A stretch of DNA of 64,000 nt, taken from the NCBI GenBank assembly GCA_965235115.1, contig OZ249448.1, forward strand, positions 7,626,001 through 7,690,000. The letters are read 5' to 3'. The translations under genes were made by a program, and so were the position numbers. Position 1 is the first letter of the stretch; each line of letters starts with the position of its first letter. Below the pieces are notes generated by a model, which searched no databases, was not told where the DNA came from, and saw only the letters and a program-made list of their open reading frames with translations. Shown piece by piece: positions 1 through 30,700 of this stretch. This stretch comes from Laetmonice hystrix. Its lineage: Eukaryota.

Positions 1-257
1 GCCACAATCCCCGGCCTTCACACAAACCGCCACGAATTTCTATGAGCCATGCGCACTGTTCATTAAACACTATTTCTCGGGGCTGAAAAACATAGAGCCC
101 CAACATGCCCGGCGGGTCGGAGGGGATGAACCTGGGTGACTTATCAGAGCACTGCACACTACCCTCCCTCCCACACCACCCCGGGCCACGGACAGCACTG
201 AGAGAGCAACCTCTGTGGTCGGCAAACTGGGCCGCCGGGAGGCGAAAATCTACTTAC

Positions 258-302
258 GCTTTGCCGTGACAGCGGAGAGTCAAATTTGGAGATTTTGTTC
301 AA
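258..302 (-). CDS. AUTS2: AUTS2-family exon, 45 nt, LNKISKFDSPLSRQS (phase 0/0)
   Basis: Acceptor gtcttgtctatttccag| and donor |gtaagt. Phase 0 matches the upstream exon ending ATG|gtaagt at 2492. Length and position match the 15-aa vertebrate exon recalled as FDKYPTKVDPFYRHS. Confidence 0.85.
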
Positions 303-2491
303 CTGGAAATAGACAAGACATGATTGTAGCGAACGGTGGGTGCTCGGGGCACGACGGGAGGTTGTCCTAAGTCAGGCTGGGACAGTCCCCGTGTAAACCC
401 CCTCCCCTTCCACCTCACCTACACAACGGGCCCTCCCCACATCTAATGTCACAACACATAAAAAAAACCGGCACCAATTTCATGGTGCATTATTGCATCG
501 TTCCAAGCGTTGTTTGCATTAGGTGCAGCGCGCAATGAAATAAATGATCCAATAAGAACTCCATCTACGTAAACGAAGGCACCTCTTTGATCTTCCCATC
601 CCTATTCTTCACCAAGTCTGCCGATAAAAAAACCCCACAAATACAATCTTAGAGGCTGAGAAAAACCGACCAGAATGATTGGGATATTGGATAACGTGAA
701 GCCAGTCGGCAATATATTTATTTATGTCCCCTCCAATAGTGTATTCTACCATGAGGTCAATGCGTACACAATTTTGTAAATTGGGTAAAAGCCACACGAC
801 ACACATTATTACGAAGGGAGGGTTCAAATTTTACATATACAAAAGAAGCACTAAACCATATCAACATTGCGGGGGGGGGGGGGGGGGAGGGGGGTTCTCG
901 AACCCCTATGATGACCGACATATAGATGACCTACATCCTAAATCCCATACCCCCTTCCGTCACTCGCCCGCTCTGTTTGCAGTCACATGCCGGCAACATT
1001 ATTATTACTTTGACTGAAATAAATGTGCCCACACAAGTATAGTTGGGTGTTGACATGCCATGTTAAAACAAACATATTAGATAGACAGATCTCCTAGGGC
1101 TATGGATGCAGGTATTGCGTTATTTCTATCGGAAATGCGGTCACTAATGTAGGGTGAGCCAATCACAGGCAAGGTTACAAGGCGTTACGGTAAACCAATT
1201 ATCGACCTACCTTTGCTTGCCGATCTCGTTCAGCGAGTTCTGCCAGATTGTGAGGCTGACCGAGGAAGCCAGGTTTCTACAAATACAATTCACACATCAT
1301 CAACATCTGACGGTGACCTATAAAAACATGCCGACATCATAAAATTACTGATCCTGGATGACCTATATAATGCATCCCCTTTTCCCTGGCTTCATAAAAA
1401 ATGTAGTTCTTGTCGATGGAAATTCATCAAAGGTTTTTCAAAACATTTAAAAAAGCCACAACGACATCAAGATTTCAGTCAGAATAGAATCCCACCTCAT
1501 GAAGAATTTCGTTTTCTTTCATTTCCTTTCCTTTCAAAGAGGTAATTTTCAGATCTCTTCCAAAACTCGCGCACCGTTTTACATGTTATACTGGGAGTGT
1601 GCGTGGCTGGGTTAGCGTGCGGGGAGTTGGCTGGTAAAATGCGGGTCCCTGAGGCCCGGACTAACTGTGTTGGGCCTTTGTCAGTACATGGCGATGTAAC
1701 AAAAGAGGCCCAGTGAATCGTTCAATGTTTCATGAGAATGCTGACACGGGTGAAAGCCTATTTGTACAGTACAGTATTGGTTATGGCAGTCTGCCACTCC
1801 TCCATGATATCACCAACTCGTCCTAATGGATGTGCCGACTAGTTCATCCCTCCACAAAGGTTATAGATTTTTCAGGCTGTCAACATTAACAACCCCTAAT
1901 TGAACGGTACGTTTGAAGATAAATAAAGTATAAATACATCAGATGGTGGAGTTTCCAGCAGGAGTTTAGCACTTGGGTTGGGGGTCCATGGTTGGTTTTA
2001 GATGAGTACAGGTAACATTGAGGTGTAAATATTTCCATCACACAGTATGATAAACGTCCCAACCTTTGTGGTACCAAACTCTTACACATGAACACACGCT
2101 TACATTTCATGATACATGTAATTTATCGACGGGATCTCCCCACTAAAAAACCAACCAGACTGTTTGCGTTCAACAAAATGTACATGTGGTTTTGTGGACA
2201 GGACTTTCTCTCGTCACAGTCGTTGGCCTACAACTGGTCAGTTGTGATATGTTATACACACAGCTGCTGTGGCTCAATACCTTACAAATGTCACCGAATC
2301 CTCCTGTCCTATTCATAAAGTGGAAACGCTCCCAGACTATGTCCCAGTGGTAGTACTGGTAGTGGCCTGGTACTACTTACAAAATGGGGCTTTGTAGCAG
2401 GCAACTCAGTAAGTGCACAACCCCGCGGACTACAGGTCTTCTCAACAGGTGGCTAAAGTCGGGCATGAGAATAAAAAACTAGATCACTTAC

Positions 2492-2703
2492 CATGTGTGG
2501 GTTTGGTGAGTGGTTGAGGCTGCCACCTAGTGGCGAGTAGGCACCGTAATGCTGATGCATGTGTTGATGTTGGTGCATATGTTGGTGTTGATGCTGGTGC
2601 ATCTCAGCGCGCAGGTAGGGAGGCGGGCCGATTGCCGCGGCCATTTGTCTGTCCTGAGAGGCCAGGAACCGGGTATTCAACTCCTGTCGTATGAGATCCT
2701 GAC
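2492..2703 (-). CDS. AUTS2: AUTS2-family exon: [70 protein letters not shown] (phase 1/0)
   Basis: Close match to recalled human AUTS2 [17 protein letters not shown]...[23 protein letters not shown]...PPM. Acceptor ttgcag| (in-frame alternative ttttag| at 2712) and donor ATG|gtaagt. Confidence 0.95.
2520..2533 (-). promoter_or_regulatory. CTCF core motif CCACTAGGTGGCAG inside a coding exon
   Basis: Exact match to CCRSYAGRKGGCRS, overlapping the codons for SPLGGS. Confidence 0.4.
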
Positions 2704-3035
2704 CTGCAACACCTAAAACGGTAAACCAAAGGTCAGCAAGTACAAATCAACCCAGCAACAATAGACAAATCAACCCAGCAATAATAGATTATATTATGGC
2801 TGGCTTCCGGCCGGGTTATCTTACAACGGAACCATGAGGGCCTTTCACAATTCGATATTAAAGAATATCTGCAATACAAGAATTAGTATGACTAGGTTTT
2901 AATTGATGAACTATATCGGTATCTGAAGACGGTCCATCACTATCTTTTAATGGCGCTATCATTCGTGTGACCTTTCGGTGACCTTATACAGATGAGGGGA
3001 ATGGATGTCAGATTGTGGGTGTGTATTGTTAACAC

Positions 3036-3637
3036 TTGGGACCAATCATGGTATGTGATCTCAAGGGACGGTGATACAGTGCTAGCATCCCTAGTGGTAT
3101 AGTTAAACCTCTTGGTGACCAATCATGGTATGTGATCTCAAGGGACGGTGATACAGTGCAAGCATCCCTAGTGGTACAGTTTAACCTCTTGGTGACCAAT
3201 CATGGTATGTGATCTCAGCGGACGGTGATACAGTGCAAGCATCCCTAGTGGTACAGTTTAACCTCTTGGTGACCAATCATGGTATGTGATCTCAGCGGAC
3301 GGTGATACAGTGCAAGCATCCCTAGTGGTACAGTTTAACCTCTTGGTGACCAATCATGGTATGTGATCTCAGCGGACGGTGATACAGTGCAAGCATCCCT
3401 AGTGGTACAGTTTAACCTCTTGGTGACCAATCATGGTATGTGATCTCAGCGGACGGTGATACAGTGCAAGCATCCCTAGTGGTACAGTTTAACCTCTTGG
3501 TGACCAATCATGGTATGTGATCTCAAGGGACGGTGATACAGTGCAAGCATCCCTAGTGGTACAGTTTAACCTCTTGGTGACCAATCATGGTATGTGATCT
3601 CAGCGGACGGTGATACAGTGCAAGCATCCCTAGTGGT
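3036..3637. repeat. Minisatellite, 77-bp unit, about 7.8 copies
   Basis: Unit tggtgaccaatcatggtatgtgatctcagcggacggtgatacagtgcaagcatccctagtggtacagtttaacctct, near-identical copies. Confidence 0.95.
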
Positions 3638-6600
3638 TTCACCATGTCCTTACATTGTGAACTAAAACCACCTCTTGAAGACATCACAGCCACTCCTAGT
3701 GCTGGTATTTTCCACAATCTGCCGAATCTACCCCAGACTATTATTTCTCTTTGTGTAAGCTGAGCCTAAAGACAACAGAAACCACGTTTGTTTCACAACG
3801 ATAAAGACACGTCGTGCCATGGAAAATAGGGCCAGCCAATCTACACTTACTACCCAACTTCGCAGCCATTGGCTAAAATTAATTAGGAGGCGATGTGATT
3901 GCCCTGTAGCAGGCGGCCAGGGGCGACAATAGCTGGGGCGGTGGCCGTACACATTAGTTGGATGTGGTAGTGAGAGGATAGGGTAAGTGTGTTAGAGTCG
4001 GTAATGGTGGGTTCCCACGCGCGCTGCACGACCAGCCCTGGCACTGTCTAATCCGCCCAGCTCGCCGCTGGCGTGCTGGGCCCTCTGTCACGGCGCACCC
4101 AGCGGAATATTAATTTGTTGATGGTATGGTGTCATGCGAAATCAGCGTCCCCTCCGCCCTGCCGCCTGAACCTGATAATCTCAGCTCACACAGCCAGCAC
4201 ACTTAATGTGACTGCGCCACCACGCAAACTCACCACTGATATGAACTTGTGTCTAAAACAATTTATGTCAGAAAACAGTTCTGCATTGCCTACACAGAAA
4301 ACATCCTCATCCAGTTCTTAGTCACAGGAATTTGCTGATTCCTTTTTCATGCCAACACTGTAGCTCATCCCTTTCTTTAAAAAGAAGGCTTACCCCGCAC
4401 TCTAAATATCCAATCAGTGAGAGTTTACATCTCATGATGTCTGTCACTTTCTATCCATAAAACATCAGGGATGAGGCAGGAATTGCTACTGTCAGGCATC
4501 CTTATTGTGGCCATGGCGACCGGCGGCGACGCTCTAATCCCATGATCCCATCCGACTCCCAATTCAATTTGTCATGTCATGCAAAAACTGAACATTTAGC
4601 GCTAACCTGATTATCAAGGCGACTCCCTGCTGGGGCCGGCACAAAGTGTTTAAACACCCTCAGGGATATTAATCTTGTGACACATCCACCCATGTCGCAG
4701 TGAATGTTGTCCCTCCTGCCATGCTCCCCCCCCCTATCACTTATTGTCCCTACCCATCCTCGCCAGAACCACTTTCTGTTCATCTTCGTTTGTGTCGCTC
4801 TTACTCCGGCAAATGCCCAGCGGCCAAGCCACGGTCACCATTTGCATTTCCCGAATGCAGTGTCCATAGAAGACGTCTATATCACATTATCTAATGTAGT
4901 GAGGGTGGACCAGCTCCCGGCGGCCCCCACACGGCCACCATGTCGCCCACTCTGACCCGCTAACGGCCCGGCCAGTGCTGGCCTACAAGGCAGCCACATT
5001 TGCTTTGATTGCTACGCAAACGCAATTCCCTGATGGCCTCTGATAGGCCGATACGCACACCCCGCCCCCCATTTGTCATGTAACCATGGAGATGAGCTTG
5101 TCGCCATGGCAGTCGTACCCCCATCACCCCACTCTATTGACTCCCCTCTGGCCCAAGCCTTCAATCGTTGTCCTCCGGTGTCCCCGACTGTCACAGAGGG
5201 CACTATATGCAGGGCCACACTACTCTGCTGACCAGTCAATATCACTGATGAGCCCTGCTCTCATGGATTCCCTCGCCAAGCCCAGTCAACAGTGAAGCCG
5301 TCTACAAGAAGCCACCCCCATTGACATCTTAGTCCAGTTTAGCTGCCCCTTCCTGCTTCCTCAGAACGCCGGGAAGGGGGGTGTTGGTATGATAGAATGG
5401 CCCACGACTGCGGTCTGTAACGGCTGCCGTTTATTTCTACTCCCTCCGGGCCTCATGTCATGTGTGGTGTAAACCCACGGCAATCTTAATCGTATTAATC
5501 AACCATAATGCTTGGCCGTTAATGCCACGAGTATTCCCCGCGCAACACCTGGGTTTGCCTGATATGCAGCCATGCCATGGATTGCCAGATCCCAAGGGGG
5601 CCACAGCCTCGCTCTAGATTGCTTACACAGTCATCACATAACATTCGCTTCCTTTGGGGGCGATATTCAAAAAAATACAGTACTCCAACAATAAACTCTT
5701 CTGCTGCTTCAGGTCTGATAACCCACAACACTCGTAATCTGCGCCCAGACGTAATCTTTCACCTTAATCTTCTTAGCTCATAATTCCGGTAATTTCAGTG
5801 GATTATGCCGCGGCATTATGAGCCTGTCTGTTGTGATAATCCGTCAGCTTTACGCTTAATACACGCGCCTGTGAGGATCTTGCATCTACGATACCGCAAA
5901 TTATGCAAAATACACATCTTTGAGCTACTCATGGGGAAGAATGGAGAGAACGGTTTCCTGCGATGTGAATGGATGGTGTCGATGATATTGTACGAACGGG
6001 TAATCCCACGAGTTCAACAATAATATGCAAAGCCGGGTCCCATAAAAACCATGGCAACATCAATCACCTAGCACCACAACGCTTAGATAAAACAGCTCCT
6101 CTGTGGCGCTCCCTCGAGCTCAATTTGCCCGTGTCCCTGCTGCCCCATCATTGCCACGCCTGTCTCCAAGCCCCAGTCATATTAATCTAAAAATTCCCCC
6201 AAGTCGGTGTAAAACTGCCACGCCGCAAATGTGCAGCAATGGTGAAAATCCCAATTCTCTCCTCGCTGTCATTATGTCGTGTCGCCATCTTTTTTCCGTT
6301 CCCCCAAGTCGGCCGACTGTGCCTTTTTCACAAAGCTCGGGGTATAATTAATGCTCCCCGTCTGGCTTTGTTGTCTTCGGCTCAGGTCAACCCAGCTCAA
6401 TGGGAAAGAAAAATACGCAGAATGGCGTTTTTGTTCATTATTTGGAGCGCCCTTAAATCCTGCTGCATTCTCTCAGCAAAGGAGGCATTCCCCTCAATAC
6501 TTGCATGGGGAGTCGAGGGGGGGGGGATCCGGCGTCTGGTACCTCCTAACGCTGGGGGTGGGGGTGAGGGGTGAGGGAGTGGGGGTGAGGGGCAGCCACA

Positions 6601-6740
6601 ACCACTGTCCCCTCATCATAATGTAGTGAATGAGAACAAGAAAACCTGGGTACAACATTCCACCAACAGCACTCCTGGCATATAACCAAAGCTAGAGAAA
6701 AACGACATCTGGCCGAGACATACTTGGAAGGAAATAAGAG

Positions 6741-6866
6741 GAAAAAGTAGTACAGTATGATAGGCACTGATGGTCAAATGAAAAAGTAGTACAGTATGAT
6801 AGGCACTGATGGTCAAATGAAAAAGTAGTACAGTATGATAGGCACTGATGGTCAAATGAAAAAGTA
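6741..6866. repeat. Tandem repeat, 39-bp unit, about 3 copies
   Basis: Unit aaaaagtagtacagtatgataggcactgatggtcaaatg. Confidence 0.9.
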
Positions 6867-7389
6867 CCAGCCAAAACGACTGGACGGATCACTGGGGAAA
6901 AACCACTCTACAATACGTTGCTTCCACAATGCTATTTGTAGACACGTGCTACAAATAATAAATTCCCTTAAACGGCAGACTAACGTACTTTTACCGTTAC
7001 TACCACCCCATACCGGCTGCCAATAATGAGAAAAATTAACACCATACATTTCACTGCCAAGTAAAGTAAGCAATGCTTGCCAAGAATGCAACAGTGTCAT
7101 GAATAATGGCCGATCCTGTCCACATTGTCATACCATCCTTCTGTCATGTATTACCAACTGTAGATGCGCAGGCCGCAACCACATTCCATCGAGTACCTTT
7201 AAGAGAAGTATCATCAGGGCTTATAGGTTCTGATTGGTTGGTCTAAGCAGACCAGCCAATCAGAAGTCTTAAGCTTAGGCTTAAGTAAGATCTTAAGTTG
7301 CTGTGTGGGTGCTGGGACACAATGAGAGAGATAATCCCTAATGTTATAGTACAGGAGATAGGAGTGACAGATGTGAGACCACCTGTTGT

Positions 7390-7640
7390 GACCACTGATT
7401 GGTCTCAGGTACACCTGCTATGTGCCAGCCCAGCCGGCATACAGCACCCTCGGAGGTAGCACCCCGTCCCCGTCTCCACTGATTGGTCTCAGGTAGACGA
7501 TCTGTACACCTGTGCCAGCCCAGCCTGCATACAGCACCCTCGGAGGTAGCACCCCGTCCCCGTCTCCACTGATTGGTCTCAGGTAGACGATCTGTACACC
7601 TGTGCCAGCCCAGCCTGCATACAGCACCCTCGGAGGTATA
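7390..7640. repeat. Tandem repeat, 90-bp unit, about 2.8 copies
   Basis: cgtctccactgattggtctcagg... recurs at 7471 and 7561; the first copy is partly deleted. Confidence 0.9.
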
Positions 7641-10352
7641 CGACCCCCTCCCTGTCATCCCGTTCACACCTGTACATGACCGTCAGTACTGCGCCCATTT
7701 CGTTCTTATCTGTTGACAGATGACAGGATAACGGCCTGCTCGGATCCTCACAACGGACGCTGACAGACGACCCTGTCATGACAAGTTGTCATGACAAGTT
7801 GTCATGACAACCCGTCACCTGACAGCTAACATACGTTGAGCCCAGATGAAAAGCGATAAGTATGACAAGTCGGTGACTTACATTACACTATCCGGCATCG
7901 ACCCTGACTGACAGTAGCGGTACCTAGGAGAAGAACCTCGTTAAGGATTCTTCCTGCCGTCCAACATAGGCAGGTGGTGTTTCGTTACTTATTACGGTTT
8001 CTGTGTCAATACCCTGGGAGGTATTCCATTGTCCACACCCACCCACCCCGACCGAGCAACCAGAAACCTATCCCCAGCGGCCCAGCGGATGTCAACCCGA
8101 GCTCTAACTACTCCAGCTCATTCACCAAGCCTATTGTCTGACTCAATTAATTTTTCTCCCCCTTAACTCAGCGGTTTGTATTGCCGTGGAACATGATGCC
8201 ATGTAATACTGTTTAATGAGAGTAGTATGATGAAATGGGAGTTTGGCCTCTGGCCTTCAATGTGAGGCACCGGATTTCATTGGCACCAACTTAAGCCAAG
8301 AGGGAAGGGGAGGGCTGGATCAGCAACCTCCGGGCCACCCCATCCCAGTGCCCCCCTAAGTGCACGAATACCCCCCCCCCCATTATCAGCAAACCACAGG
8401 TGTGCGGTGGGAATATAAGGGATCCAATTATGATCCAGGTAATCAGGCTGAGAGATGGCGGCCGTGTGGGCCATGTAGACCAGCCGGCCCCAGCACACAG
8501 CCCCAGTCACCAGCCACACGGCCCCAGCACACAGCCAGTACCCACACAGACGGCCCTAGTCCACCCTCATTCATGACAGCACCTAATCAACCTATAATTG
8601 TCCACAGAGGCACACAGCCAACCGACCGACGTACGCCCAAAGGGGCACGATCTCAGAGAACACCTTCAACAAGCGCCTGGTAAACACTTTTTTCTCCACT
8701 CCCGTATAGTTTTTTTTTAAATTTTTTGCTGGTGTGGGAGTCTTTGTTCAACACAGATGTAAGCCATGACATCTGTGTTCGGAAAGCCCCCATACAAGTC
8801 CACATGCTGGTCGTCTTACAACTGGGAGCTGGTACGACTTCAACCCTTTTTTTAACCGTTTGACAAACATACTGAAGGTTTTATCCTAATGTTTGTAGAA
8901 GCTAGAATACGTACGTCATCAGCATGTTTACACTAACTGCAACCTGTTTTCTTTTGACGAAAAAAACCCGGCTTCCTTTCAAATTGGCAGGGGTACAACC
9001 ACTGCTGTGGGCTCTCCACAGCCGACAGCGCGTTGTGCCGTTTTGCCACCAGATGGAGTTACTGAGCCCCGCCCGCCCCGTCACTGGTCCGTCTGTGAGT
9101 GGAGCGTGGTGAACGCACACAAAGGGCTCGTCACAGTGACCACTCCAGCCTGTACTGACCACTGGTTATCATTCTCTATTCAGGCCGTGTCCGACGACTA
9201 CAAGCTGTGTCAGAGACAACAGTAGCCAGATGACCTGACGGTCGGATGCCCCCTCCCTCACCCTGGGTCGTGTCACTGAGGCTGACAACAAGATGGTGGA
9301 AACTGGCCCGGCGGTGCGTCAGATGGCAGACCACCGCCGCCACCACTATCACCACCACCATCTCCCGGGGGATCCAATAGGGATCCGATATGATCCCAGC
9401 ACCACCTCGGTGGGACTCCCCCACCAAAACGTTAAGGTCTACGGGGTTCTTCACTTCAACCCCCGGCTCTCAGTGGGCTGACGGCACAGGTCAGCCTGCC
9501 CCGGGCGGAGGGTGGCAGTGGAGAGGGCAAAGGACTTGATACCTTCACTCACACCTGCTGCCGTGAAGGAGGCCTTGTGAGGCACTCAGGGGCGCGACTT
9601 ATGGCTGACATAGGACAATAGGCCAGCTGGTATCGACAACAGCCAGTGGCTAGTGGACGACAGGGGTTGGGAGAGGGGTGGGGAGTACGGGCAGCATACC
9701 CCGGCCTGTAGCTCGGGTTGTGACGGGTCGTGAGGTGCAGGTCCGCCGAGACGGCAGCCACCGTGGCTCCTGGAGACAAACCTGAAGCCACACTCTGGCT
9801 GCGGGTCGTCCTGACAGAGTCGGCTGGCGACGAGTACTCCTATTGTAGACCACCGAATACATGGAGTAGTAATCCTTTGTCAAGGTAACCCGGCTGGGGG
9901 TTATACACAGCTATACATCCACTGCACAACATCACAGGCACAACACAATAAACACACCAACACATGACCAGATGAACCGGTTGTAGCTGTCACAATATTC
10001 ACTCCAGTCCCAGGGCCGTCCAAGGCACCCAGCTTATATTGTATCCGTCCTTTCACTGTGAATGTATGCATCCCTCTAGGACGATCCGCGTCGCCAACAC
10101 AACAGTGGCAAGTAATACTGCTCTATATGCACATCCTACCTTACTAACACGCTCTCACTCGTCTTCCTCCTCCTCTGTCTGTGCTCGTATCCGGCCGGGT
10201 ATAGAGTAGACATCCAGAATTATCCACACCCGCCTCGGTAAGTATAATCCAGGGGTGTTCTTCCTTGTGGTCGCCGTCAAAGATGAAGCCTCTCTGCCAG
10301 CAGCAGTAGTTCTGACACATCCAAGCACACACTGCCGAAATCACCTACCTAC

Positions 10353-10377
10353 CTTTGGTTTCTATGCCGACTAACAT
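10353..10377 (-). CDS. Candidate alternative first coding exon MLVGIETK(G), splicing in phase 1 onto the 2703/2712 exon
   Basis: gccATG context and donor AAAG|gtaggt. Phase 1 matches the 2703 acceptor. It lies at the 3' end of a CpG/GC-rich leader-like stretch (about 10380-10830). Confidence 0.55.
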
Positions 10378-10779
10378 GGCCGTGGTTGAGGCGAGACTGT
10401 GCGGGCGGGGCGGGTGTCTGCGAGTGTGATGGCTGGCGGCCCGAGCTTTGTCCGCGGCGGCGGGCGGCGGTGGACGGTGTGCGCATGCACGCGTGTAGTG
10501 CCGGGGTGGGGGTGCGGGGTACGTACGTCCAAGGCTGGCGGCTGGCTGGCTGCTGCTGCCGCCACTCTCACTTGGCGTCCTTCTCTCGCCTGACAGCCGC
10601 CTCGTAATTATGTTCAAAATTACGCTGTGTATTACACTCAATTACTCTGGATGGCGAGGGGGGGGAGGTCCGATGGGCTCTGAGTCATACGTGGTACCGT
10701 CTCCAACCAGCGACCAGCGCCGCTCTGTGAGTACCTGCGCCTTGTACGGGGAATCTTGTACCAGTCCAAGGATGTGCAC

Positions 10780-11075
10780 AGTGCCGTGTGCGCTGGCCGT
10801 GTGCCGCGCCAGCTCGCGCTCCCTCTGGTTTTAGCCAATATAATCCAATTCTGGTCTCTTAGGCAAAATCTGTTCGTCGGAAGCGATCTGAGATGATAGG
10901 CTATTTGTGTTCATGACGGGCGGGCAGCACCCGCCTCATAATTCATAAATCGATGCCATTCTCAAACGGTGCAAACAGGCGCCAGGCGCTGAGCGCATCC
11001 AGGGGGCGGGGCTTGCCACCATGATTGGCAGGCAGCAGGGCATGCGATTGGGTCGGGGGAGCAGCGTGTATTTAG
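10780..11075 (-). promoter_or_regulatory. Putative internal promoter (two CCAAT boxes and a GC box)
   Basis: ATTGG at 11024-11028 and 11047-11051 (CCAAT on minus) and GGGGCGGGGC at 11003-11012, upstream of the GC-rich leader and the ATG at 10377. Confidence 0.5.
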
Positions 11076-11684
11076 GGTGAATTACCACAGCCTGATGGGT
11101 ACATTACAACACTAATGGAGCAAGTCTGCATCTATTTCCACTGTTAATGGGATCGGAATGGACCCGATAACTCAATCGTGGTGGCTAATCGCTGCAACAC
11201 CACTTTTGCCTGACAAAAGACCATGAAGTACGAAAAAAACACCTCCTGGTTGACTCGGAAGCCGAGTGCTCACAAAATACAATCGAGCTGCAGCGCAACA
11301 CTGCATCAAGTATTGACATGAGGACCCTACCGCTAGGCGGGTGGTGGTCGGGGGTGTGGAGGGGGTCTCAGCGGAGGAGGAGGCAGGGGCCCAGTTTTCA
11401 CGGCAATGGTTCCTTTCACATGACTGGTTCAGCCATTCTCCCTCCAGTCAGCCGGCCTACCCGTCCCCACTCACTGCGCCCTGCCCCCTCCCCACCCCAC
11501 CCCACCGTCACACTCCCTGGTGTGTCACCCCGACACGCTGTGCGTGCCCGTAATTGACACACCATAACATTTTAATTCCACGCTTGCCTCTGATCCCTTT
11601 CATGGGTGGGGCGGCGGCGGCAATCAAGGGCGACAAATGAAAACGCCTGATCGCCTGCCAATTGGTCTCGCACATAATGTCACT

Positions 11685-11698
11685 GTTGCCATGGCAAC
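11685..11698. promoter_or_regulatory. Perfect palindromic RFX X-box GTTGCCATGGCAAC
   Basis: Exact consensus. A CCAAT lies about 25 bp away and a second X-box-like GTCTCTATGGCAC follows. Confidence 0.55.
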
Positions 11699-14600
11699 TG
11701 GGATTCTGTCTCTATGGCACGAGGTTAATTCCATTGTTTGCCTCCATTTGAAAAGATGACCGCCGGAAGATCGTGTTATGGTGACAAAAGAAAGCGAGTG
11801 AGCGGGACGGCTAGTGGGGTCCGCCTCAAGTGGCCATTATCGAGTTAATATCTTTGTTTAGTGAGGCCGAGTGATGGCCCTCTCGGCCGCCCATTACGAC
11901 AATGTTAACATCCCACGCCGGCTGGCCCTCACTGATCCTGCCCAATGACCCGTGCATCGTCAAATGTACGCTTTTTTTGTGCTCGGCGCGTGCGGTTCTG
12001 TCCTGGCCGTGAATGCCCACATTGGCCGTGCCGCCTGGGCCGTGCCGCCTGGGCCGTGCTCGCCAGCCGTGCTGCCCGACATGCCCACACCCCCATCGTT
12101 CACCCTGCACTTATCGACTCGCTATCGATGATGTGTTCACATGCAATCTTGCAACTGATCGCCGGCTCGCCGCGGGGCAAACAATCTGAGGCAACCCCAC
12201 CCGATCCTTACAATGCCTTCATTATAAAACCTCCCGGCTCTCTCAGGCTACACACGTGGACCTGGGCAGTAGTAATGGTGCTAATTTACAGCCAGCCGCC
12301 GTCGACTTTCTCGCCGGGGGGTAGAAAGAGTCAGTGATAGCTCAGCTTAGATTTAGGCCATCAGGCAAAACTGATCCCCACTGGCCAAAGAGAAGACAAC
12401 ATGGGAAGGCTGCTGAAACACAATCCCTTAGAGACTTACATGATCCGAGCCCCGACCAAAATGTCAACCACTCCCCTTTCATTTACCCCCGCGTGGAAAC
12501 AAACCGACCAGCTAGCGCCCCCTAGCGACACGGGGCTTTAATGAGGCGACAAAGCGTCGCTCAGGACACCATCTTGACTTTGGTCGCCGCCATCCTCACG
12601 ACTTCGCCTGCCAGTCGGCCCCCACAACTCTCTTCATCACTCGGCGATAAATGGGGCTCGGCGAGTACCGATGTGAATCAGGCCCTTCAATTGGAGCGTG
12701 TAATACGAGCCGGACACACCATATTTTGCCTGTCACGCTTGTCCTCAAATCGCTAACTACCCTACAACTGTAATGAATTTCAATTAAGGCTCTAATGAAT
12801 TGCAAACGTTATCTCTTGAATGCGATCCACAAAATATGCCGTGCTCCCGCCTATTCTCATCAAGGCGCTCAGCCATCGTCTGCCCGTAGCAGATTAATAA
12901 GCGACACATTTCCTGAGTACGTTAATCATATTTCTATTTTGCATGTGCTCCTATTCAGCCGTTTTGTGTGTTTAATCAGTGCAATCGAGGCAGCATTTTT
13001 GGTGCTAATCAACTGCAAGGACTATGAAAACAAGTCGTGAAACATATCAATGCACGCACTAATCCAAACTGAATTAGCTGCATTGAAGTTCGCGTTTCCA
13101 ACTATCTTTGCCCTGCTCATTTAAATTTCAAGCAGGGCACCATGCAATATTCAGTCATTATTTCTTTTTAGATTAATCCACATATTGCTACAAGGGCCCT
13201 CCGCTGATTGCCAGCTTATACCCAGTCAAATGAGAATAAGATGTGGGTTGGATGAAAGCGAGGGAGAGAGTGAGAGCGAGTATAAAAAAAAGTACGGAAT
13301 CACTGCAGCCTTTCTCCCCTTTTTTTCAAACTAGAACCTATTCCAAGTTATTACAATCAACTGAGCTGTGCGGCAGCAAAGCTTTCAACTAGTCACGGTG
13401 AAATTTGATTTTAAAAGATGAAAACACCTACTTCATCAAAATTACTTCTTAATGACGTACTATTGCTGAAAGGCTATCATTTTCTCCATTCAACTCTTTA
13501 TGTCAAAATAAATTCTCAGAACCTGGTCGTTTAAGCATGTAATCAAGCAGATGACACATTACAATAAATGTTGATTCTTTTCGAAAATCTATAGCCTCCC
13601 CATGCAGAAGCACTGCTTTTTATGCTTCAGTACAAAATGCCTATGGATATTAATTTGACGTTTTGAGTATTTTTAGGAGGGATAAATTATATGCCTTGCG
13701 GATTATTACCCCTCGGCTGAACACAGACCAGAATGGAAACTAATTCTGACAAAGCAACAATTATGTCAATTTTATCTGCACGTTCGTCAATTACTCGCTT
13801 TTATGTTACCAGGCATGCATTTTATGCGCCTTTTTCATCGGCAGTAATTTAAAAGTATATCATGTTAAGACTATTTCACTGTGGTGTGGATAATGTAAAT
13901 GTGCAGGTTTTTGTCCGTCACTATTAATTTTTCATAGTGTCTGCAATGTACTTAAATTAAAAGGCAAATTTTGAAGCGCGCACGGCAGCTGCTACGCACA
14001 TAATCCTGGTATTCAAATATCGCTGACAAAGTAACGATCATTATGAGCGTTTTATTCAATAATGTAGCAAGGCTTTTGTCACGGATTTTTTTCCACCGAC
14101 AGTAGCGGTAGATGCAAATTACATGCGTCATTGTTGGCTTGCAATTGGCTTAACTGTGTTGAAAGCTATAATATGTGTGACAAAGGCTGGCTTGTTTACC
14201 TCCATAGCTATTGGATTGGCGGTTTTTCTCCTGCAGGAACGACTGCTTCTTTGATATTTCAGATCCTCCGATGAGGGGTTTTATCACGTTGAAGCTTAAT
14301 ATCTAGATGGGAAATACCAACAATGCAATTTACGTTCTGTGCAAAATTATCCTTTTTCGCTTTGCCAGAGCTAAATACTCTAAATCAGATGCGGTATTGA
14401 ATATGGTAATTGGATTAAATGCAATTCCTAGCACATTAAAAGGACGTAAATGGAGAAGCGGTGCCTTTTACTTAGCACTGATGGCAGATATTTTTCACAA
14501 GTGTGAGCAACATTCAATCTGGAATGTGTTCTCCGTTTGCTGCCATTCAAACATTCACTTGTGTAATTTGTTAACCGAGTAAAAAGTGGACCATTCTACG

Positions 14601-17087
14601 AGCAGAGCTGGCAGGAATATTACTCTTTATTTGTTGAGAGCAATAAACAGTCTGCCTAACGTAGCCATAAGCAGGCTGGTAAAAATGGTGCGTTCTCCTC
14701 GGCATAATCCCCATACTGTAAGCCTCCGTTCACATTAGAAGCTGTAGGGACAATGCAAATCTTTGGAAGATGTTTTTTACACTGCGTGCTGCTGTTCTGT
14801 TGTTGTAGTCAATTGGTGGGTGTCAAACAGTGCCTGGCGGCTGGCTTTGTTCATGCCACTCGGCTTCTGTGTGAGTTACTGAATCTAAAGGCATATCAAT
14901 GTATAACAGACACGGCCACACAATATGACACTTCCATAACAGATACCAAAATAGTTCACCAAGGCGTCTCTTACTAACCGAACAATTCTAACTTCATACC
15001 ACGACAATTGTTTCCTACGGCTGGTAATGTTTCCTTCTGTTGCCTGACTGGATGTCGTTTAGAAACTCGGGATATTTTCAATAATCTCTTGCCCCTTGTA
15101 TTACAGTTTGATTTACATCTATTACACTCAATTATTACATATTGAAATCTCACCACCCGTAATGTGAATTGCATGATAACGAAACAAGTCAGATTTCAAC
15201 GTTTCCATTGCAGCACGTCGATTACATCGTCTTCAGGTCAACAGCCACCGAGATACGGGTGGGCGGTTTTCTGGTTGTAGCCTGGTAGGAGCTGTGTTAA
15301 TATCATGACAATGAATGCCAGCAGTACAAAGGCACTCGAGGTGGAGCAGGCCGGGGTGGCCCTATACCTGGGTGCTGGCAGTATGTCCGCCCAGGTCCGT
15401 GCTGCTATCGACGACACCGACACACAACAACAAAAGACGGTGATCCAGGCTGGGTGGAGCAGTGGTCGTGTTAAACAAAGCCCGCATCAAACCACTTCAA
15501 GCGATCAATGCTACAGTGTTGACCCAGTTGTCATTCGTGGGCAATGGGGGCTGCCCCCTCCCCCTCCCCCCTCAACCCATTACGTTTCTCATTGCCAGCT
15601 CTCATAGCTGGGAATACCTTCTCTTGTTCGAAGACACTAAAACCCAACACCAAAACATGTCCTTAACAAGGTAATGTGCAAATAATTCCAAACACAGTTA
15701 GCTCTTCACATTACAAGAAAATTCAGGCGTTGAGATGAAATTAGTGACTAAATACACACACTCTTCACTCTTTCGTATTGGCCAATTCATCTGTGTAGGT
15801 TATTTTCTTCTCTCACCTCTTCTTTTCACATTTCGTCTGAGCGGGAGTGTGTCGTTTTAACGCGTGTTAACGATAAAAGAGCCAGCGTGGTGACCATGTA
15901 ATCGTCTCATGCTCCGTTAAAACGTCACCATTAGTATTGGTTACAGGGCCACACAAAAACAACCAGGCGACGTTTTCCAGCCCAGTCCTTTTGTGTACAC
16001 TTCGTCACATCACAACTTTCACGGTACACGTCCCCGTGTGAGCCGGATTACAGTCACCTGTTCATGTATTCATTCTCTACCTCTATCCTTCCCACCACCC
16101 ACACAAAACCCGCCTCACAAACCCTTGCCGCCCCCACTATTTACCCTACGACACGTGTTCAAAGATCATTCACCCTCGACACAATAAATACCCAACACGG
16201 TCTAATTATTCCCATTACAAACGAGTCATTAGCAGCCCCGTGCTGATACAACAACTGACTGTTATCATCAATAACATGAAAATGTAGACAAAAAACAGCA
16301 CACCGGGCTAACGAGGGTGACAAATTAACGGTCTGGCGGAGTGCCAGCTACTCGGCTCCATGCCAACCAGGTCTGTGTTCAACTGTTACGTGCAGGTGTC
16401 TGACACACAACAAATATACATAAAGGAGGAGGACTGCTGAATTTGTTTCAATACAAACTTCCGTGCCGAAAAAAGTCCAGTTGTTTTGAGACCCAAATAA
16501 ATCTTGTCATTCCAAACAGATGGACATTTCGGACTTTCCTAGATCTCAATTCAATTGTGAGAATTCGAAGAGGTTTGTTCTAAATGTATTTGTTTATGTG
16601 CAAAATCTTTGAATTCGAAAGATTTCCTCCATAATGTGACTAGGTGCAGACTTGATAAGGAAAGTATAAATACCTTGTTGAATAACTTGACCCCGATAGT
16701 GGACTGCAAAAAACAGGGGCGAAATTTCATTCTTGTTCTTGAGCCGTACACGACCAGAGACAGTCATTAGACGAGAACTCATACAGCCTACGGGAGTTTA
16801 TCATTATTGTGGGTTAAAACCTTTAGCCGTCAATATTAGTCTGTTTTCTGGCAAGTAAACATAAGAACGGGAGAATAACCAATATAAGGTCCTCATTTCA
16901 GCTCTCTGTGAACAAATGAAGGCTAGTCGAACTCGACGCTATATTGTCAAGAAAACAGGCAATCAGAAAAACACCCAATTATGCGAGTTCAGGCCATTAT
17001 TTTAGAGCATTGGGTTCGACTTTTTCATTTGCACAAAGCTTCCTTTTGCAAACCCTTGCTATAGGAAAGAAGCGAGAGAATACTTAC

Positions 17088-17422
17088 TTGATTGAAACGA
17101 CGATAAAGCGTCAGTTGCAGATAACTGCGGATGCATGGCGGGTTGTCCTGGCAACGCCGTGGAAGAGAGGCTGCCTGACGGATGCGGCAGAGGGGGTGCG
17201 AACATGGCTGACTGGGCGAGGGAAGGATGGGCGGTTTGATGTGGATGTTGGGGTAATGGTGGGTGTGGGCCGGTTTGGTGTTGTGCTGGGTGAGGGTGGA
17301 GGTGTGGAGATGGTCCCGGAGTCGGGGTGTGGGCGTTGTGAAGCGACTGTATGGGAAGACTTGGCGCCGGCGACAAGTGCGGCCGGCCGGGATGTAGCGG
17401 GCTTGGCGTGGCCGCTGTCGAG
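17088..17422 (-). CDS. AUTS2: AUTS2-family Pro/His-rich exon: STAATPSPLHPG...QSAMFAPPLPHPSGSLSSTALPGQPAMHPQLSATDALSSFQS (phase 2/1)
   Basis: Acceptor tttggtattttgttattgcag| and donor A|gtaagt. 335 nt = 1+333+1. The MFAPP...SGSL...GQP segment resembles human [25 protein letters not shown]. Phases fit both neighbouring exons. Confidence 0.9.
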
Positions 17423-25349: not shown

Positions 25350-25780
25350 CTGAAAAAAACAAAGAGAGATTTTATAACTTGTTAAGAAAACAAAACATTC
25401 AACGTCAAACCACTATAAACTACCGGTACACGATTTCTTTCCCAACGTTTTGGCCTCTTTTTAAGTCGGGGCGGGGGGGGGGGGGGGGTTATAGGGTATG
25501 AGAACTTTCAATTAGGGTTAGATCTCTACAGTGGTATTTAAGACTTGGGACCGTTCTCTGACCAGGCTGCCAACTTAACAGCCCTTTGTGAACTCTCTCG
25601 CCCTTTTCTCGTCATAGTAGCTTTGATTGTATGCCACCTGTGTGTGGGTACCCGGGATGTTGGCAAGTTGATGGGGACCCTGGCAGTAGGTAACACTGGC
25701 AGGCACAGGCTATCCTTTAAACCTGACCCAGGAGGCAGGCATGGTCTCCTAACACACGTCCTGTAATGAAGGTAGTTACT

Positions 25781-27711
25781 GTGGGAGGGAGGGAGGGTCC
25801 ACACCCTCCACCTGTACACCCAGCTGGCCCCTCTGGCTGCCTCAATGTGGGAGGGAGGGAGGGAGGGTCCACACCCTCATCCTGTACACCCAGCTGGCCC
25901 CTCTGGCTGCCTCAATGTGGGAGGGAGGGAGGGTCCACACCCTCCACCTGTACACCCAGCTGGCCCCTCTGGCTGCCTCAATGTGGGAGGGAGGGAAAGT
26001 CCACACCCTCCACCTGTACACCCAGCTGGCCCCTCTGGCTGCCTCAATGTGGGAGGGAGGGAGGGTCCACACCCTCCACCTGTACACCCAGCTGGCCCCT
26101 CTGGCTGCCTCAATGTGGGAGGGAGGGAGGGTCCACACCCTCCACCTGGACACCCAGCTGGCCCCTCTGACTGCCTCAATGTGGGAGGGAGGGAGGGTCC
26201 ACACCCTCCACCTGGACACCCAGCTGGCCCCTCTGGCTGCCTCAATGTGGGAGGGAGGGAGGGTCCACACCCTCCACCTGTACACCCAGCTGGCCCCTCG
26301 GGCTGCCTCAATGTGGGAGGGAGGGAGGGTCCACACCCTCCACCTGTACACCCAACTGGCCCCTCTGGCTTCCTCAATGTGGGAGGGAGGGAGGGTCCAC
26401 ACCCTCCACCTGTACACTCAGCTGGCCCCTCTGGCTGCCTCAATGTGGGAGGGAGGGAGGGAGGGTCCACACCCTCCACCTGTACATCCAGCTGGCCCCT
26501 CTGGCTGCCTCAATGTGGGAGGGAGGGAGGGTCCACACCCTCCACCTGTACACCCAGCTGGCCCCTCTGGCTGCCTCAATGTGGGAGGGAGGGAGGGTCC
26601 ACACCCTCCACCTGGACACCCAGCTGGCCCCTCTGACTGCGTCAATGTGGGAGGGAGGGAGGGTCCACACCCTCCACCTGTACACCCAGCTGGCCCCTCT
26701 GGCTCCCTCAATGTGGGAGGGAGGGAGGGTTCACACCCTCCACCTGTACCCCCAGCTGGCCCCTCTGGCTGCCTCAATGTGGGAGGGAGGGAGGGTCCAC
26801 ACCCTCCACCTGTACACCCAGCTGGCCCCTCTGACTGCCTCAATGTGGGAGGGAGGGAGGGTCCACACCTTCCACCTGTACACCCAACTGGCCCCTCTGA
26901 CTGCCTCAATGTGGGAGGGAGGGAGGGTCCACACCCTCCACCTGTACACCCGGCTGGCCCCTCTGGCTGCCTCAATGTGGGAGGGAGGGAGGGAGGGTCC
27001 ACACCCTCCACCTGTACACCCAGCTGGCCCCTCTGACTGCCTCAATGTGGGAGGGAGGGAGGGTCCACACCTTCCACCTGTACACCCAGCTGGCCCCTCT
27101 GACTGCCTCAATGTGGGAGGGAGGGAGGGTCCACACCTTCCACCTGTACACCCAACTGGCCCCTCTGACTGCCTCAATGTGGGAGGGAGGGAGGGTCCAC
27201 ACCCTCCACCTGGACACCCAGCTGGCCCCTCTGGCTGCCTCAATGTGGGAGGGAGGGAGGGAGGGTCCACACCCTCCACCTGGACACCCAGCTGGCCCCT
27301 CTGACTGCCTCAATGTGGGAGGGAGGGAGGGTCCACACCCTCCACCTGGACACCCAGCTGGCCCCTCTGGCTGCCTCAATGTGGGAGGGAGGGAGGGAGG
27401 GTCCACACCCTCCACCTGGACACCCAGCTGGCCCCTCTGACTGCCTCAATGTGGGAGGGAGGGAGGGTCCACACCTTCCACCTGTACACCCAACTGGCCC
27501 CTCTGACTGCCTCAATGTGGGAGGGAGGGAGGGTCCACACCTTCCACCTGTACACCCAGCTGGCCCCTCTGGCTGCCTCAATGTGGGAGGGAGGGAGGGT
27601 CCACACCTTCCACCTGTACACCCAACTGGCCCCTCTGACTGCCTCAATGTGGGAGGGAGGGAGGGTCCACACCCTTCACCTGTACACCCAGCTGGCCCCT
27701 CTGGCTGCCTC
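25781..27711. repeat. GC-rich minisatellite, 66/70-bp unit, about 29 copies
   Basis: Unit gtgggagggagggagggtccacaccctccacctgtacacccagctggcccctctggctgcctcaat; units differ mainly by one extra GGGA. Confidence 0.95.
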
Positions 27712-30700
27712 TCTCCAGGATCAAACTCCTGCCAAGAACCAGTCGGTGCCAACAAGGCCTGACCACTGGCTCCACCACCGGCCCAGCGCTCCAACCGGTT
27801 CTATTTAATGAGGCGGCAATGAAAAAGTCAATCAAAGCCTCCTCGGTGGGCAAAAACTTTGACCGATGAGGACGCCTGGGTTTGGTTTGGCATCCATTTA
27901 CCTGATCTTCAATCAATGCATCTCGTTCAAACAACACGCTGCCACATCCACACTTGGAAAAATTCCAACTTAGAAGTTACAGGGGTTCTTTTACAAAGGT
28001 TTAATTTTCATAGTTTATTTCGGAAAGTTTCCATGAATATGAACTTACACCATTCATCACCACCACATCGGCCAAGTTTCCAGAATTGTTTTTTTAAAGT
28101 TCCTTGTATTCACATGGACCTGCGGTCGCCAACTATACCCCGGAAAGCGATCAGTCTCACATATAGTGGCAGGCCCAGGCACACGGGAGTGAAACACGTC
28201 ATTAAACACTCAGTGTGACGGACATTGTGACTGACACCTGTCACTCAGTAATCCACAGCCTGAGGTCAGTATCAGCGCTCTCTTTACCTGGCCCTCGAGG
28301 GCCTCCATTAGGTGGGGATGAAAGCCACCTCCAGACTGCTGGCCGCAAGGAGTAGAATGAAGGCAGATAACGCACCATAAGGTGTGTACGCCTACAACCA
28401 CAGTCAGTTCATTACAGGCCGATTGATTGATTTATTGACGAGTTCTCATCATATAACCGACCAGTGTATACAGGATACAGTACAAGTGGTGGTTTCTATT
28501 GACAGCCAGCTGGCACACGGTTAAAACAGGATTGATTTATTGACTCCCGTGTCACCCTCAGTCTGATGTACATGGGGGGATTATCACACACCCTGACTAC
28601 CCGGGGGTCGAGGCAGGTCAACCACCCTCACCTACTCATAACCTATCATATCAATATTTATTACATGTAGACAATGTGCGCTCTATCACAGCACACCCAC
28701 ACCGACTCACCTGATGTTGGACAGTTATCTATAATATATGTATTCACCAGGTGCAACACCTATTTATTAAGTTCGAGTTACCAAACGTGAGTCTGAAACT
28801 ACACACACAGCACAACAGTCTTGTTCTCCTTTCTCCTAATAAACCTTATTAATGACTTCATTTTTTAACCTTCGTTATAAACACCACATACGTCGAGATC
28901 CAATCAACGCCTTTCTCGGTGTCTGACCCTTCGCTCTCCTCAATATCTCGACATCATTATGTCCCCCAACAATGGTGTGTGCATTTAGGTTTCCATTACA
29001 AATGTAGCCATTATAATACAGCGACTCTCCAATAAAGCAGATTTCGTGGCTCGAATAACTAATGACAGAAGGTTTTGTTCCTGAACTACAACAGTAAATA
29101 TTCCTTCACTTTCTGATTAATGAAAATGGTTCTGGGTAAGAAGAAGGTTCTACCTAAGTAATTACACAAGTTTTCCGAACAAGATCTTAAGGGTAAGCCT
29201 TTCCATTATCCCCTTATCAGCCCGTTAATTATACTGGAGCCAGGATCACTCTGCGCGTCTATCAATAAATCGAGAGGTGTTAAAAAGCTCATATTCTGCA
29301 ATCAGTGTCGTCCATACAAAAAGTCACTTGATTGTATTGACAGTTGGTAGAGCGCATCACGGTAATGATATTATATGGTTTAAATGATGACTACGGCTAA
29401 TGACGGCGCCCATCAAACGTGCGCCCGCCGCCGCCACATCCGGCGCCGTTTGAAGCCTGCCTGGTGGCGGCGTTACGTATACAATCTAGTTACATCCCGC
29501 CCCCAAATCTTCTCTCGTCTCCGACATGAAACAAACAGCACGTCTTGCCGGGTGGCGGCCGCCATCTCTAGTCTCCACCACCACCCACAGATGACGTTTA
29601 AAATCAATATCGTATTGAGACACAGTTCTCTTAACTCTGGTCTTGTACATCGAGATGGTCATAATATCGTAGATGATCTGCCCGAAATTTCCAATCTTAA
29701 ATCTTATTGCACCAAATGTAACGACTTAGTATAGTATATAGTATAGTAACGACTTAGGCTACAACAAAATATGATGAGCTTTTTGAACAGCAGAAGTCGA
29801 CAATCATTTAACGTTTATCAGTAGATTTTCTTTACGTCCCCATATTTAATCGACCAAATATTTGTACACCATTCAGAATACAAATTATGGCAGCACGTGG
29901 CGGTAAACTGAATGTTTAATGTATATTTTCTACCATTATAATATCAATTTAAAATGCCACACACACGTCCGAACCGACTGCGATGCCATACGTGATGATC
30001 GCCTTGTACGGATTCCGTGACCTACATACGGTGACCTCCAACCTTATTCTCAACCATAACTGGTCTATTCCGCTTTTTCAGCCATCAATATTTATTCGAA
30101 GAGCTGCATGACCATTAGTAATCTGTCATCATAAATCTTATCCTCACTGATTAAAACATTAATATTTCATCTTAGCGTCTCTGGCACTTCAAGATGGTGG
30201 ACTAAAAACATGCATATTTAATACAATATACCACTGACGTTTCCAGCCAAGTATTTAGTTGTGGCAAGTTACTCTGATATTAACCTCACCTGGCCTGGGT
30301 CATTCTCGTCAGTGAGTGAACGTGTAATCTTGGCATCTTATTATCTGTCTAAGTGTAAACTAGAGAGAACGATTTATGACCATCTATATTTATACAGCTA
30401 CCGGAGTGAGAGTTTCCCTGTTTCGAAGTCTGTCCTCTCTATCCTCCATTTATTTCTGTTTTTACTGGTGGGAACGACAGATAATATTAAATGACCTTCT
30501 TTCATGTCCAATGTACCTGTAATTTTGTGGAGGGATATGGCTAGACTTTCTGTGTACTGAGCTGCAGCGATTTTTGTTAAGTGTGTCACTGTATGTAATA
30601 TTTTTGTATAAAACGGTCATGCTTTCTGCCACCAGAGGCGCTGACATTGTACTTCCGTCGTGCTGTATTGGGCTTCATTCGATGAAAGAATTTCCCTGGC

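What the first reader, a model, noticed from the sequence alone, without database searches (positions are those of the whole stretch)
10353..11075. Candidate internal promoter and dedicated first exon making a short C-terminal AUTS2 isoform
Seen in minus-strand order: CCAAT, CCAAT, GC box, a CpG-rich leader with a uORF (MTQSPSDLPPLAIQSN*, ending 10638), then gccATG TTA GTC GGC ATA GAA ACC AAA G|gtaggt. Phase 1 joins the 2703/2712 acceptor to give [21 protein letters not shown]. Known: vertebrate AUTS2 has long and short C-terminal isoforms from internal start sites. Inference: a long/short switch may exist in this invertebrate through its own first exon, so the two-isoform system could be ancient.
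Basis: partly seen in the sequence, partly recalled or inferred. Interest (0 to 1): 0.8.

Follow-up and report, generated by a model that had tools for sequence, protein, structure and literature searches.

The report
Unproven internal promoter in AUTS2 intron
A CpG-rich stretch inside a long intron of a worm-like AUTS2 gene could start a short protein form. No RNA data support it, other annelids have no counterpart, and short AUTS2 forms annotated in other invertebrates start at a different, conserved methionine.

Summary
The exon joins the His-repeat (HX) exon at 2703 or 2712 in frame.

New points in favour:
- The candidate lies mid-way in a 14.4-kb intron between the 'MFAPP' exon (17422-17088, which also ends in phase 1) and the HX exon.
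- Its donor is the only site in that intron scoring as high as the gene's real donors.
- 10351-11050 is the most CpG-rich non-coding 700 bp in 104 kb.
- It is single-copy.

Points against or missing:
- No RNA run could be brought to bear.
- An out-of-frame uATG (10486) reads across the start codon.
- The motif cluster is no more frequent than chance.
- In Owenia, Capitella and Paralvinella this intron is only 0.63-1.95 kb and holds no counterpart.
- None of the annotated or transcript-derived invertebrate AUTS2 proteins I inspected starts with a mini-exon joined to the HX exon.
- Short forms in amphioxus, Octopus and Aplysia start at the conserved MFAPP methionine, as in vertebrate variant 1.

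Verdict: a plausible but unverified candidate that would be lineage-specific. The 'ancient dedicated first exon' inference is not supported.

The parts
10300..11050 (-). CpG-rich, GC-rich single-copy island: the candidate promoter and leader
   Evidence: CpG observed/expected 0.83-1.09 and GC up to 0.72 in 200-bp windows, against a background of about 0.6-0.7. Third-ranked 700-bp window by CpG count in 104 kb, behind two coding exons. Only a self-match in the genome. No Rfam hit and no Pfam hit in its ORFs.
11024..11051 (-). Two CCAAT boxes (11051-11047 and 11028-11024)
   Evidence: Read and located. The cluster with a GC box is not enriched over shuffles at the 104-kb scale.
11002..11011 (-). 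GC box CCCCGCCCCC. Further GC boxes at 10918, 10462, 10408 and 10403, all in the same orientation.
10638..10688 (-). uORF MTQSPSDLPPLAIQSN, including its stop
10349..10486 (-). Out-of-frame upstream ATG whose 45-codon ORF overlaps the proposed start codon and stops inside the donor
   Evidence: It would compete with initiation at 10377 if the TSS lies upstream of 10486.
10353..10377 (-). Proposed coding part of the first exon, ATG TTA GTC GGC ATA GAA ACC AAA G (MLVGIETK + G), ending in phase 1
   Evidence: Kozak context has G at -3 and T at +4.
10347..10352 (-). Donor GTAGGT (AAG|GTAGGT)
   Evidence: Score 5.94 with the approximate matrix. It is the only site at or above this score on the minus strand of the intron.
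2492..2712 (-). Shared His-repeat (HX) exon, homologous to the first half of human exon 9. Constitutive acceptor gives start 2703; an alternative in-frame acceptor gives 2712.
   Evidence: Homologs read ...FHS-S-QELLQRELN, which matches 2703.
17088..17422 (-). Upstream constitutive Pro/His-rich 'MFAPP' exon of the long isoform. It ends in phase 1 with donor CAA|GTAAGT.
17203..17205 (-). Conserved methionine codon of MFAPP. Annotated short isoforms in other animals start at the equivalent codon.

Best explanation
The finding sits on a non-repetitive CpG-rich island inside a lineage-specifically expanded 14.4-kb intron of the AUTS2-family gene. That intron is the equivalent of human intron 8.

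My most likely reading is a regulatory island that has stayed largely unmethylated in the germline and so kept its CpGs. It would act either as an intronic enhancer-type element or as a promoter for a non-coding or antisense transcript. On this reading the 8-codon ATG-to-donor unit is not a demonstrated, and probably not the essential, product.

Shown: island composition, single-copy status, position in the gene model, and absence from other annelid AUTS2 introns.
Inferred: hypomethylation, transcription-factor occupancy (NF-Y or Sp-type motifs), and any effect on AUTS2 transcription.

Rough split: enhancer-type element 0.25, promoter of another transcript 0.12.
For: - The island stands out from the background CpG depletion and is single copy.
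- GC boxes and CCAAT motifs occur in both orientations, so they do not define a strand.
- A second CpG-rich patch with the same motif cluster lies at 11500-13000. This suggests a broader regulatory block rather than one core promoter.
- G-over-C skew at 10400-10499 favours the + strand, not the AUTS2 sense strand.
- There are seven upstream ATGs, including one overlapping the proposed start.
- No homolog shows a mini-exon joined to the HX exon.
- Other annelids have no counterpart.
Against: - There is no direct evidence of enhancer activity, hypomethylation or any transcript.
- The composition (GC 0.72, five GC boxes, CCAAT boxes) followed immediately by the intron's best sense-strand donor, in the right phase and with an ATG in adequate context, is more typical of a promoter plus first exon than of an enhancer.
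- Lack of conservation also weakens any functional reading.
Confidence: 0.37

Rival explanations
1. The island is an internal AUTS2 promoter. Transcripts start in it, use the 10353 donor and splice to the HX exon (2703 or 2712). The result is a C-terminal isoform that keeps the HX repeat. Translation would start at 10377 (MLVGIETKG-QDLIRQ...) or at the next in-frame Met in the HX exon.
For: - All elements are present.
- The donor is the only one in the 14.4-kb intron that matches the gene's real donors.
- Phase 1 equals the phase of the constitutive upstream exon.
- GC content falls right after the donor.
- The island is among the top 1.3% of windows and single copy.
- Vertebrate AUTS2 has internal start sites in exons 7 and 9, next to this position (PMC9008325).
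- In this gene family, mini first exons from internal promoters are annotated in many lophotrochozoans, but joined to a different exon.
Against: - No RNA support could be obtained.
- The out-of-frame uATG at 10486 overlaps the start codon, and six more uATGs lie upstream of it.
- The architecture is absent from every annotated or transcript-derived homolog I inspected.
- The homologous introns of Owenia, Capitella and Paralvinella are short and hold no counterpart.
- The motif cluster is at chance frequency.
- The combination was picked post hoc.
Confidence: 0.25
2. No function. This is a GC-rich, partly low-complexity stretch of intron ((GCC)n and CAGC-type runs) in an expanded intron. The CCAAT and GC motifs, the ATG and the donor coincide by chance.
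For: - GC-rich blocks are common in the window.
- All three minus-strand frames are open here simply because of GC content.
- The motif cluster is at chance level.
- Strong donor-like sites occur at about 0.14 per kb on the opposite (non-gene) strand, and others in the window follow no exon.
- There is no conservation.
Against: - Other GC-rich blocks in the window are tandem repeats with CpG observed/expected of 0.03-0.4. This one is unique and keeps CpG near 1.0.
- The joint occurrence of island edge, best donor, ATG and matching phase is expected in only a few percent of such introns (my estimate).
Confidence: 0.3
3. Cassette exon of the long isoform. An upstream AG (exon start 10589, 10541 or 10445) together with the 10353 donor would insert 31-79 Pro/Ala/His-rich residues in frame between the MFAPP and HX exons.
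For: Three frame-preserving AG sites exist, and the frame is open for 88 codons upstream of the ATG. There is a weak low-complexity match to a chiton AUTS2 Pro/His region, E = 0.04.
Against: - The polypyrimidine tracts are poor, 0.40-0.55.
- All homologs run straight from ...SSFHS-S into QELL.ELN with no insertion.
- The open frame is explained by GC content.
Confidence: 0.03

Closest known systems
Vertebrate AUTS2 C-terminal isoform (AUTS2-C / variant 2), from an alternative TSS inside exon 9 (PMC9008325, citing Beunders 2013 and Hori 2014)
   Same: An internal start next to the HX-repeat exon. The product keeps the Pro-rich region, the Auts2 domain and the C-terminus and lacks the N-terminal half.
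   Different: The vertebrate TSS lies within exon 9, inside the HX repeat, so that isoform lacks the HX repeat and has no dedicated spliced first exon. The candidate is a separate exon 7.6 kb upstream and would retain the HX repeat. Its expression is unproven.
Mouse S-AUTS2 variant 1 / FBRSL1-201 type: TSS in exon 7, start codon in exon 8 (PMC9008325, PMC7732068)
   Same: A C-terminal isoform that keeps the HX repeat.
   Different: It starts at the conserved MFAPP methionine. The same start is used by annotated short models in platypus and fish, Branchiostoma floridae X14, Octopus bimaculoides and Aplysia. In this window that codon is at 17205-17203, 6.8 kb upstream of the candidate.
Annotated lophotrochozoan AUTS2 isoforms with mini first exons (Mytilus, Magallana, Saccostrea, Ostrea, Mercenaria, Argopecten, Liolophura, Lingula, Paralvinella)
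   Same: An internal promoter plus a 1-15-codon dedicated first exon whose peptide is not conserved between genera.
   Different: These exons splice onto the 'ASDASSDLF' exon far upstream (window equivalent about 32422). They remove only about 170-190 N-terminal residues. None joins the HX exon.

Membership tests
AUTS2/FBRSL1/FBRS gene family (host gene) | Pfam Auts2 domain (PF15336) above the curated cut-off | tested here: met
   Two exon-wise matches on the same strand 9-11 kb downstream of the window start, 64.3 and 47 bits against a cut-off of 23.
AUTS2/FBRSL1/FBRS gene family (host gene) | Conserved ELNxRFL + HX-repeat exon and MFAPP exon, in family order and phase | tested here: met
   Window 2703-2492 and 17422-17088 align to the Lingula, Liolophura, Paralvinella and cephalopod proteins.
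Alternative promoter with dedicated first exon | Transcript 5' ends (TSS) in the candidate promoter | not testable with these tools
   No run on record as RNA holds the locus. X4 was not listed for 10353-10950.
Alternative promoter with dedicated first exon | Splice junction from the first exon to the shared exon (10353>2703/2712) | tested here: inconclusive
   Read laying on window 1-6000 placed no X4 contig. The DNA runs X1 and X3 cover it without joints. This is absence of data, not of the junction.
Alternative promoter with dedicated first exon | Competent donor, compatible phase and usable start codon | tested here: met
   AAG|GTAGGT scores 5.94, the best in the intron. Phase 1 matches the upstream constitutive exon. 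G at -3. Caveat: an overlapping out-of-frame uATG at 10486.
Alternative promoter with dedicated first exon | Conservation of the exon or architecture in relatives | tested here: not met
   - Paralvinella, Owenia and Capitella introns are 1.95, 0.63 and about 0.77 kb, with no similarity and no phase-1 ATG mini-exon.
- No such N-terminus in the inspected homologs.
- The ORF search and the degenerate pattern scan were both blank.
- No close relative with long contigs was available.
Vertebrate AUTS2-C (exon 9 TSS) isoform type | TSS inside the HX-repeat exon, with a product that lacks the HX repeat | tested here: not met
   The candidate is a separate upstream exon, and its product would include the whole HX exon (PMC9008325).
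CpG-island-type (TATA-less, GC-box/CCAAT) promoter | Local CpG and GC excess over the surrounding sequence | tested here: met
   CpG observed/expected 0.94 and GC 0.60 over 700 bp, in the top 1.3% of windows.
CpG-island-type (TATA-less, GC-box/CCAAT) promoter | Motif content beyond chance and strand-defining | tested here: inconclusive
   The cluster is seen 2 times against 1.8 expected in 104 kb. CCAAT count reaches p about 0.15. There are five GC boxes in one orientation, no TATA, and CCAAT motifs on both strands.
CpG-island-type (TATA-less, GC-box/CCAAT) promoter | Unmethylated DNA, H3K4me3 or open chromatin | not testable with these tools
   No methylation or chromatin data were reachable.

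The most novel reading that the evidence does not exclude
This annelid-like lineage expanded the intron before the HX exon 7- to 20-fold. Within the new sequence it evolved its own CpG-island promoter and an 8-codon first exon. The product would be an HX-repeat-retaining C-terminal AUTS2 isoform, a convergent route to the long/short switch that vertebrates achieve with start sites inside exons 7 and 9.
Probability: 0.22. Interest if true: 0.45.

Novelty: new member of a known kind. Interest (0 to 1): 0.22.

Why it matters
In vertebrates, AUTS2 long and C-terminal isoforms have different roles, and mutations affecting the C-terminal part cause the more severe disease. Whether the isoform switch predates vertebrates therefore bears on which AUTS2 functions are ancestral.

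If this exon were real, it would show an invertebrate making a C-terminal isoform from an internal promoter, apparently by independent invention.

The candidate is not a shared annelid feature. The conserved MFAPP methionine, already used as the start in annotated amphioxus and mollusc models, is the better handle on an ancient short isoform.

Tried and rejected
- **RNA evidence.** Two run searches (candidate leader; last exon) found only four runs of one sample, none on record as RNA. X4 has 59 Mb of contigs, and notes from other agents suggest it is the animal's RNA run; I did not verify this. X4 holds 31% of the sampled words of the last exon, but it laid nothing on window 1-6000. It was not listed for the leader. 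Expression is therefore untested rather than negative.
- **Choice of read laying stretch.** 10353 and 2703 are 7.6 kb apart, beyond the 6,000-letter limit. I chose the acceptor side and it was blank.
- **Repeat or transposable element.** Rejected: single copy in the genome.
- **Non-coding RNA gene.** No Rfam match in 8000-14000.
- **Nested protein gene.** No Pfam hit in ten surrounding ORFs.
- **Conservation by protein search.** Searching the 98-codon open frame gave no hit.
- **Degenerate DNA pattern for MLVGIETKG plus donor, in metagenome contigs.** No hit.
- **Closest relative.** The best match to the last exon (70% identical) exists only as Logan contigs of 9 kb or less. The closest HX-exon match is a 919-nt metagenome scaffold. 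Neither reaches the intron.
- **Cephalopod transcript contigs.** These looked like alternative 5' ends. They proved to be retained intron and an in-frame 75-nt cassette exon, not dedicated first exons.
- **Cassette-exon reading of the candidate.** Possible in frame, but the acceptors are poor and homologs have no insertion there.
- **Caveat on the donor matrix.** Relative ranks are more reliable than absolute scores.

Full report
**Observation**

- CCAAT at 11051-11047 and 11028-11024.
- A GC box at 11011-11002.
- A GC-rich, CpG-rich stretch.
- A 16-codon uORF from 10688, with its stop ending at 10638.
- ggccATG at 10377, followed by TTA GTC GGC ATA GAA ACC AAA G.
- The donor GTAGGT after 10353.

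Two acceptors give exon starts 2712 and 2703. The phase-1 join to 2703 reads [21 protein letters not shown], and the join to 2712 is also in frame.

**Gene context**

The window is G000:C18:7626001-7690000 of a 627-Mb assembly. Pfam Auts2 (PF15336) matches two downstream exons on the same strand, and a 378-codon last exon follows.

Mapping Lingula, Liolophura, Paralvinella and cephalopod AUTS2 proteins onto 104 kb, together with direct reading, gives this model around the finding:
- A Ser-rich exon at about 25371-24673.
- The Pro/His-rich 'MFAPP' exon at 17422-17088. It ends in phase 1 with donor CAA|GTAAGT.
- The His-repeat (HX) exon at 2703-2492.

Homologs read ...SSFHS-S-QELLQRELN, so 2703 is the constitutive acceptor. 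The candidate therefore lies in the middle of a 14.4-kb intron. By the description in PMC9008325, that intron corresponds to the one before human exon 9, whose first half encodes the HX repeat.

**Evidence for the candidate**

With it, AAG|GTAGGT at 10353 scores 5.94. It is the only site on the minus strand of the intron at or above that score. The gene's real flanking donors score 5.5 and 6.5.
- The exon ends in phase 1, as does the constitutive upstream exon.
- The 700 bp at 10351-11050 hold 59 CpG (observed/expected 0.94, GC 0.60). Only two windows in 104 kb hold more, and both are coding exons.
- GC content falls from 0.72 to 0.51 right after the donor.
- The region is single copy. It has no Rfam match and no Pfam match in its open frames.
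- Five GC boxes lie in it, all in one orientation.

**Evidence that weakens it**

- The double-CCAAT plus GC-box cluster occurs twice in 104 kb against 1.8 expected from local shuffles. The second copy, at about 11658, sits in a neighbouring CpG-rich patch.
- CCAAT-type motifs lie on both strands, and their number is unremarkable.
- Donor-like sites this strong occur at about 0.14 per kb on the opposite (non-gene) strand, and several others in the window follow no exon.
- If the TSS lies where the CCAAT boxes suggest (about 10940), the leader carries several upstream ATGs. One, at 10486, opens a 45-codon out-of-frame ORF that runs across the proposed start codon.
- The open frame upstream of the ATG is explained by GC content. 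All three minus-strand frames are open here.

**Expression**

- Three runs have contig totals close to genome size and behave as DNA.
- The fourth, X4, has 59 Mb of contigs. It holds 31% of the sampled words of the last exon and was not listed for 10353-10950.

The 10353-2703 distance exceeds the 6,000-letter limit. I laid X4, X1 and X3 on window 1-6000 to catch whatever is joined to the 2703 acceptor. X4 placed no contig there. Expression is therefore untested.

**Relatives**

A full-library search with the last exon and two word-indexed searches recovered AUTS2 proteins from many invertebrates. Cluster listings named them. Inspection of their N-termini showed three things:
- Annotated short models start at the conserved MFAPP methionine. 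These are Branchiostoma floridae X14 (784 aa), Octopus bimaculoides (662 aa) and Aplysia (766 aa), like platypus and fish models. This matches vertebrate variant 1 (PMC9008325, PMC7732068).
- Bivalves, a chiton, Lingula and Paralvinella have mini first exons. These join the 'ASDASSDLF' exon far upstream, whose counterpart here lies at about 32422.
- No protein starts with a mini-exon joined to the HX exon.

Cephalopod transcript contigs that looked like alternative 5' ends proved to be retained intron and a 75-nt in-frame cassette exon.

**Homologous intron in other annelids**

| Species | Intron between MFAPP and HX exons | GC | CpG observed/expected |
|---|---|---|---|
| Paralvinella | 1.95 kb | 0.36 | 0.11 |
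| Owenia | 0.63 kb | 0.32 | 0.13 |
| Capitella | about 0.77 kb | not separately measured | not separately measured |

None of the three shows similarity to the candidate by blastn or nhmmer. None has an ATG-initiated, phase-1, donor-terminated unit. A protein search with the candidate's open frame and a degenerate DNA pattern scan of metagenome contigs were both blank. The nearest relatives exist only as short contigs that do not reach the intron.

**Reading**

The elements are real, and their combination is somewhat unlikely by chance. By my estimate, it is expected in a few percent of such introns. It was, however, selected post hoc. It lacks any RNA or conservation support, and it has no parallel among annotated invertebrate isoforms.

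| Reading | Probability |
|---|---|
| Regulatory island that is not this exon (enhancer-type, or promoter of another transcript) | about 0.37 |
| No function | about 0.30 |
| In-frame cassette exon | about 0.03 |

The idea that a long/short AUTS2 system predates vertebrates has better, annotation-level, support at the conserved MFAPP methionine (window 17205-17203).

**Comparison with known systems**

Vertebrate AUTS2-C starts inside exon 9 and lacks the HX repeat. Mouse variant 1 starts transcription in exon 7 and translation in exon 8 (PMC9008325). All three vertebrate paralogs make C-terminal isoforms (PMC7732068). The candidate differs from both types: it is a separate spliced exon, and its product would retain the HX repeat. 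If real, it would be a new member of a well-known kind, the alternative promoter with a dedicated first exon.

Noticed in passing
window 17203-17205 (minus), within exon 17422-17088: The methionine of the conserved MFAPP motif is present here (SAMFAPPLPHP, context agccATGt). It aligns with the start codon of annotated short AUTS2/FBRSL1 models in amphioxus, Octopus, Aplysia, platypus and fish. It is a better candidate for an ancient C-terminal isoform start.
   Followed up: partly
window about 32390-32425 (minus): Exon beginning ASDVGSEGFFST. In bivalves, a chiton, Lingula and Paralvinella, annotated isoforms splice a 1-15-codon alternative first exon onto this exon. An equivalent internal promoter may lie upstream in this window.
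   Followed up: no
window 11500-13000: A second CpG-rich patch (observed/expected 0.9-1.2) with another double-CCAAT plus GC-box cluster at about 11658. Together with the finding it forms a block of about 2.7 kb with a CpG excess.
   Followed up: partly
window 2713-17087: The intron between the MFAPP and HX exons is 14.4 kb here, against 0.63 kb in Owenia, about 0.77 kb in Capitella and 1.95 kb in Paralvinella. That is a 7- to 20-fold lineage-specific expansion.
   Followed up: partly
window 2703-2712 (minus): Two in-frame acceptors 9 nt apart (ttttag|GTGTTGCAG|GTCAGG) could add Val-Ala-Gly before QDLIRQ. Homologs match the 2703 form.
   Followed up: no
window 25500-27800, 35400-35900, 43700-46200; genome 7606001-7608200 (L003); window about 74100-75400 (L005): Several long GC-rich tandem-repeat arrays, with CpG observed/expected as low as 0.03-0.1. 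They give long spurious open frames and, in one array, 13 periodic strong donor-like sites.
   Followed up: no
L010 1-235, L012 1-226 and 430-504, L011 1-160 (cephalopod RNA contigs): Contigs from two runs begin at nearly the same point, about 230 nt inside the intron upstream of the HX exon. A 75-nt in-frame cassette exon lies between the HX exon and the FDKIP exon. This could be intron retention or an exon-proximal start like the vertebrate exon 9 TSS.
   Followed up: partly
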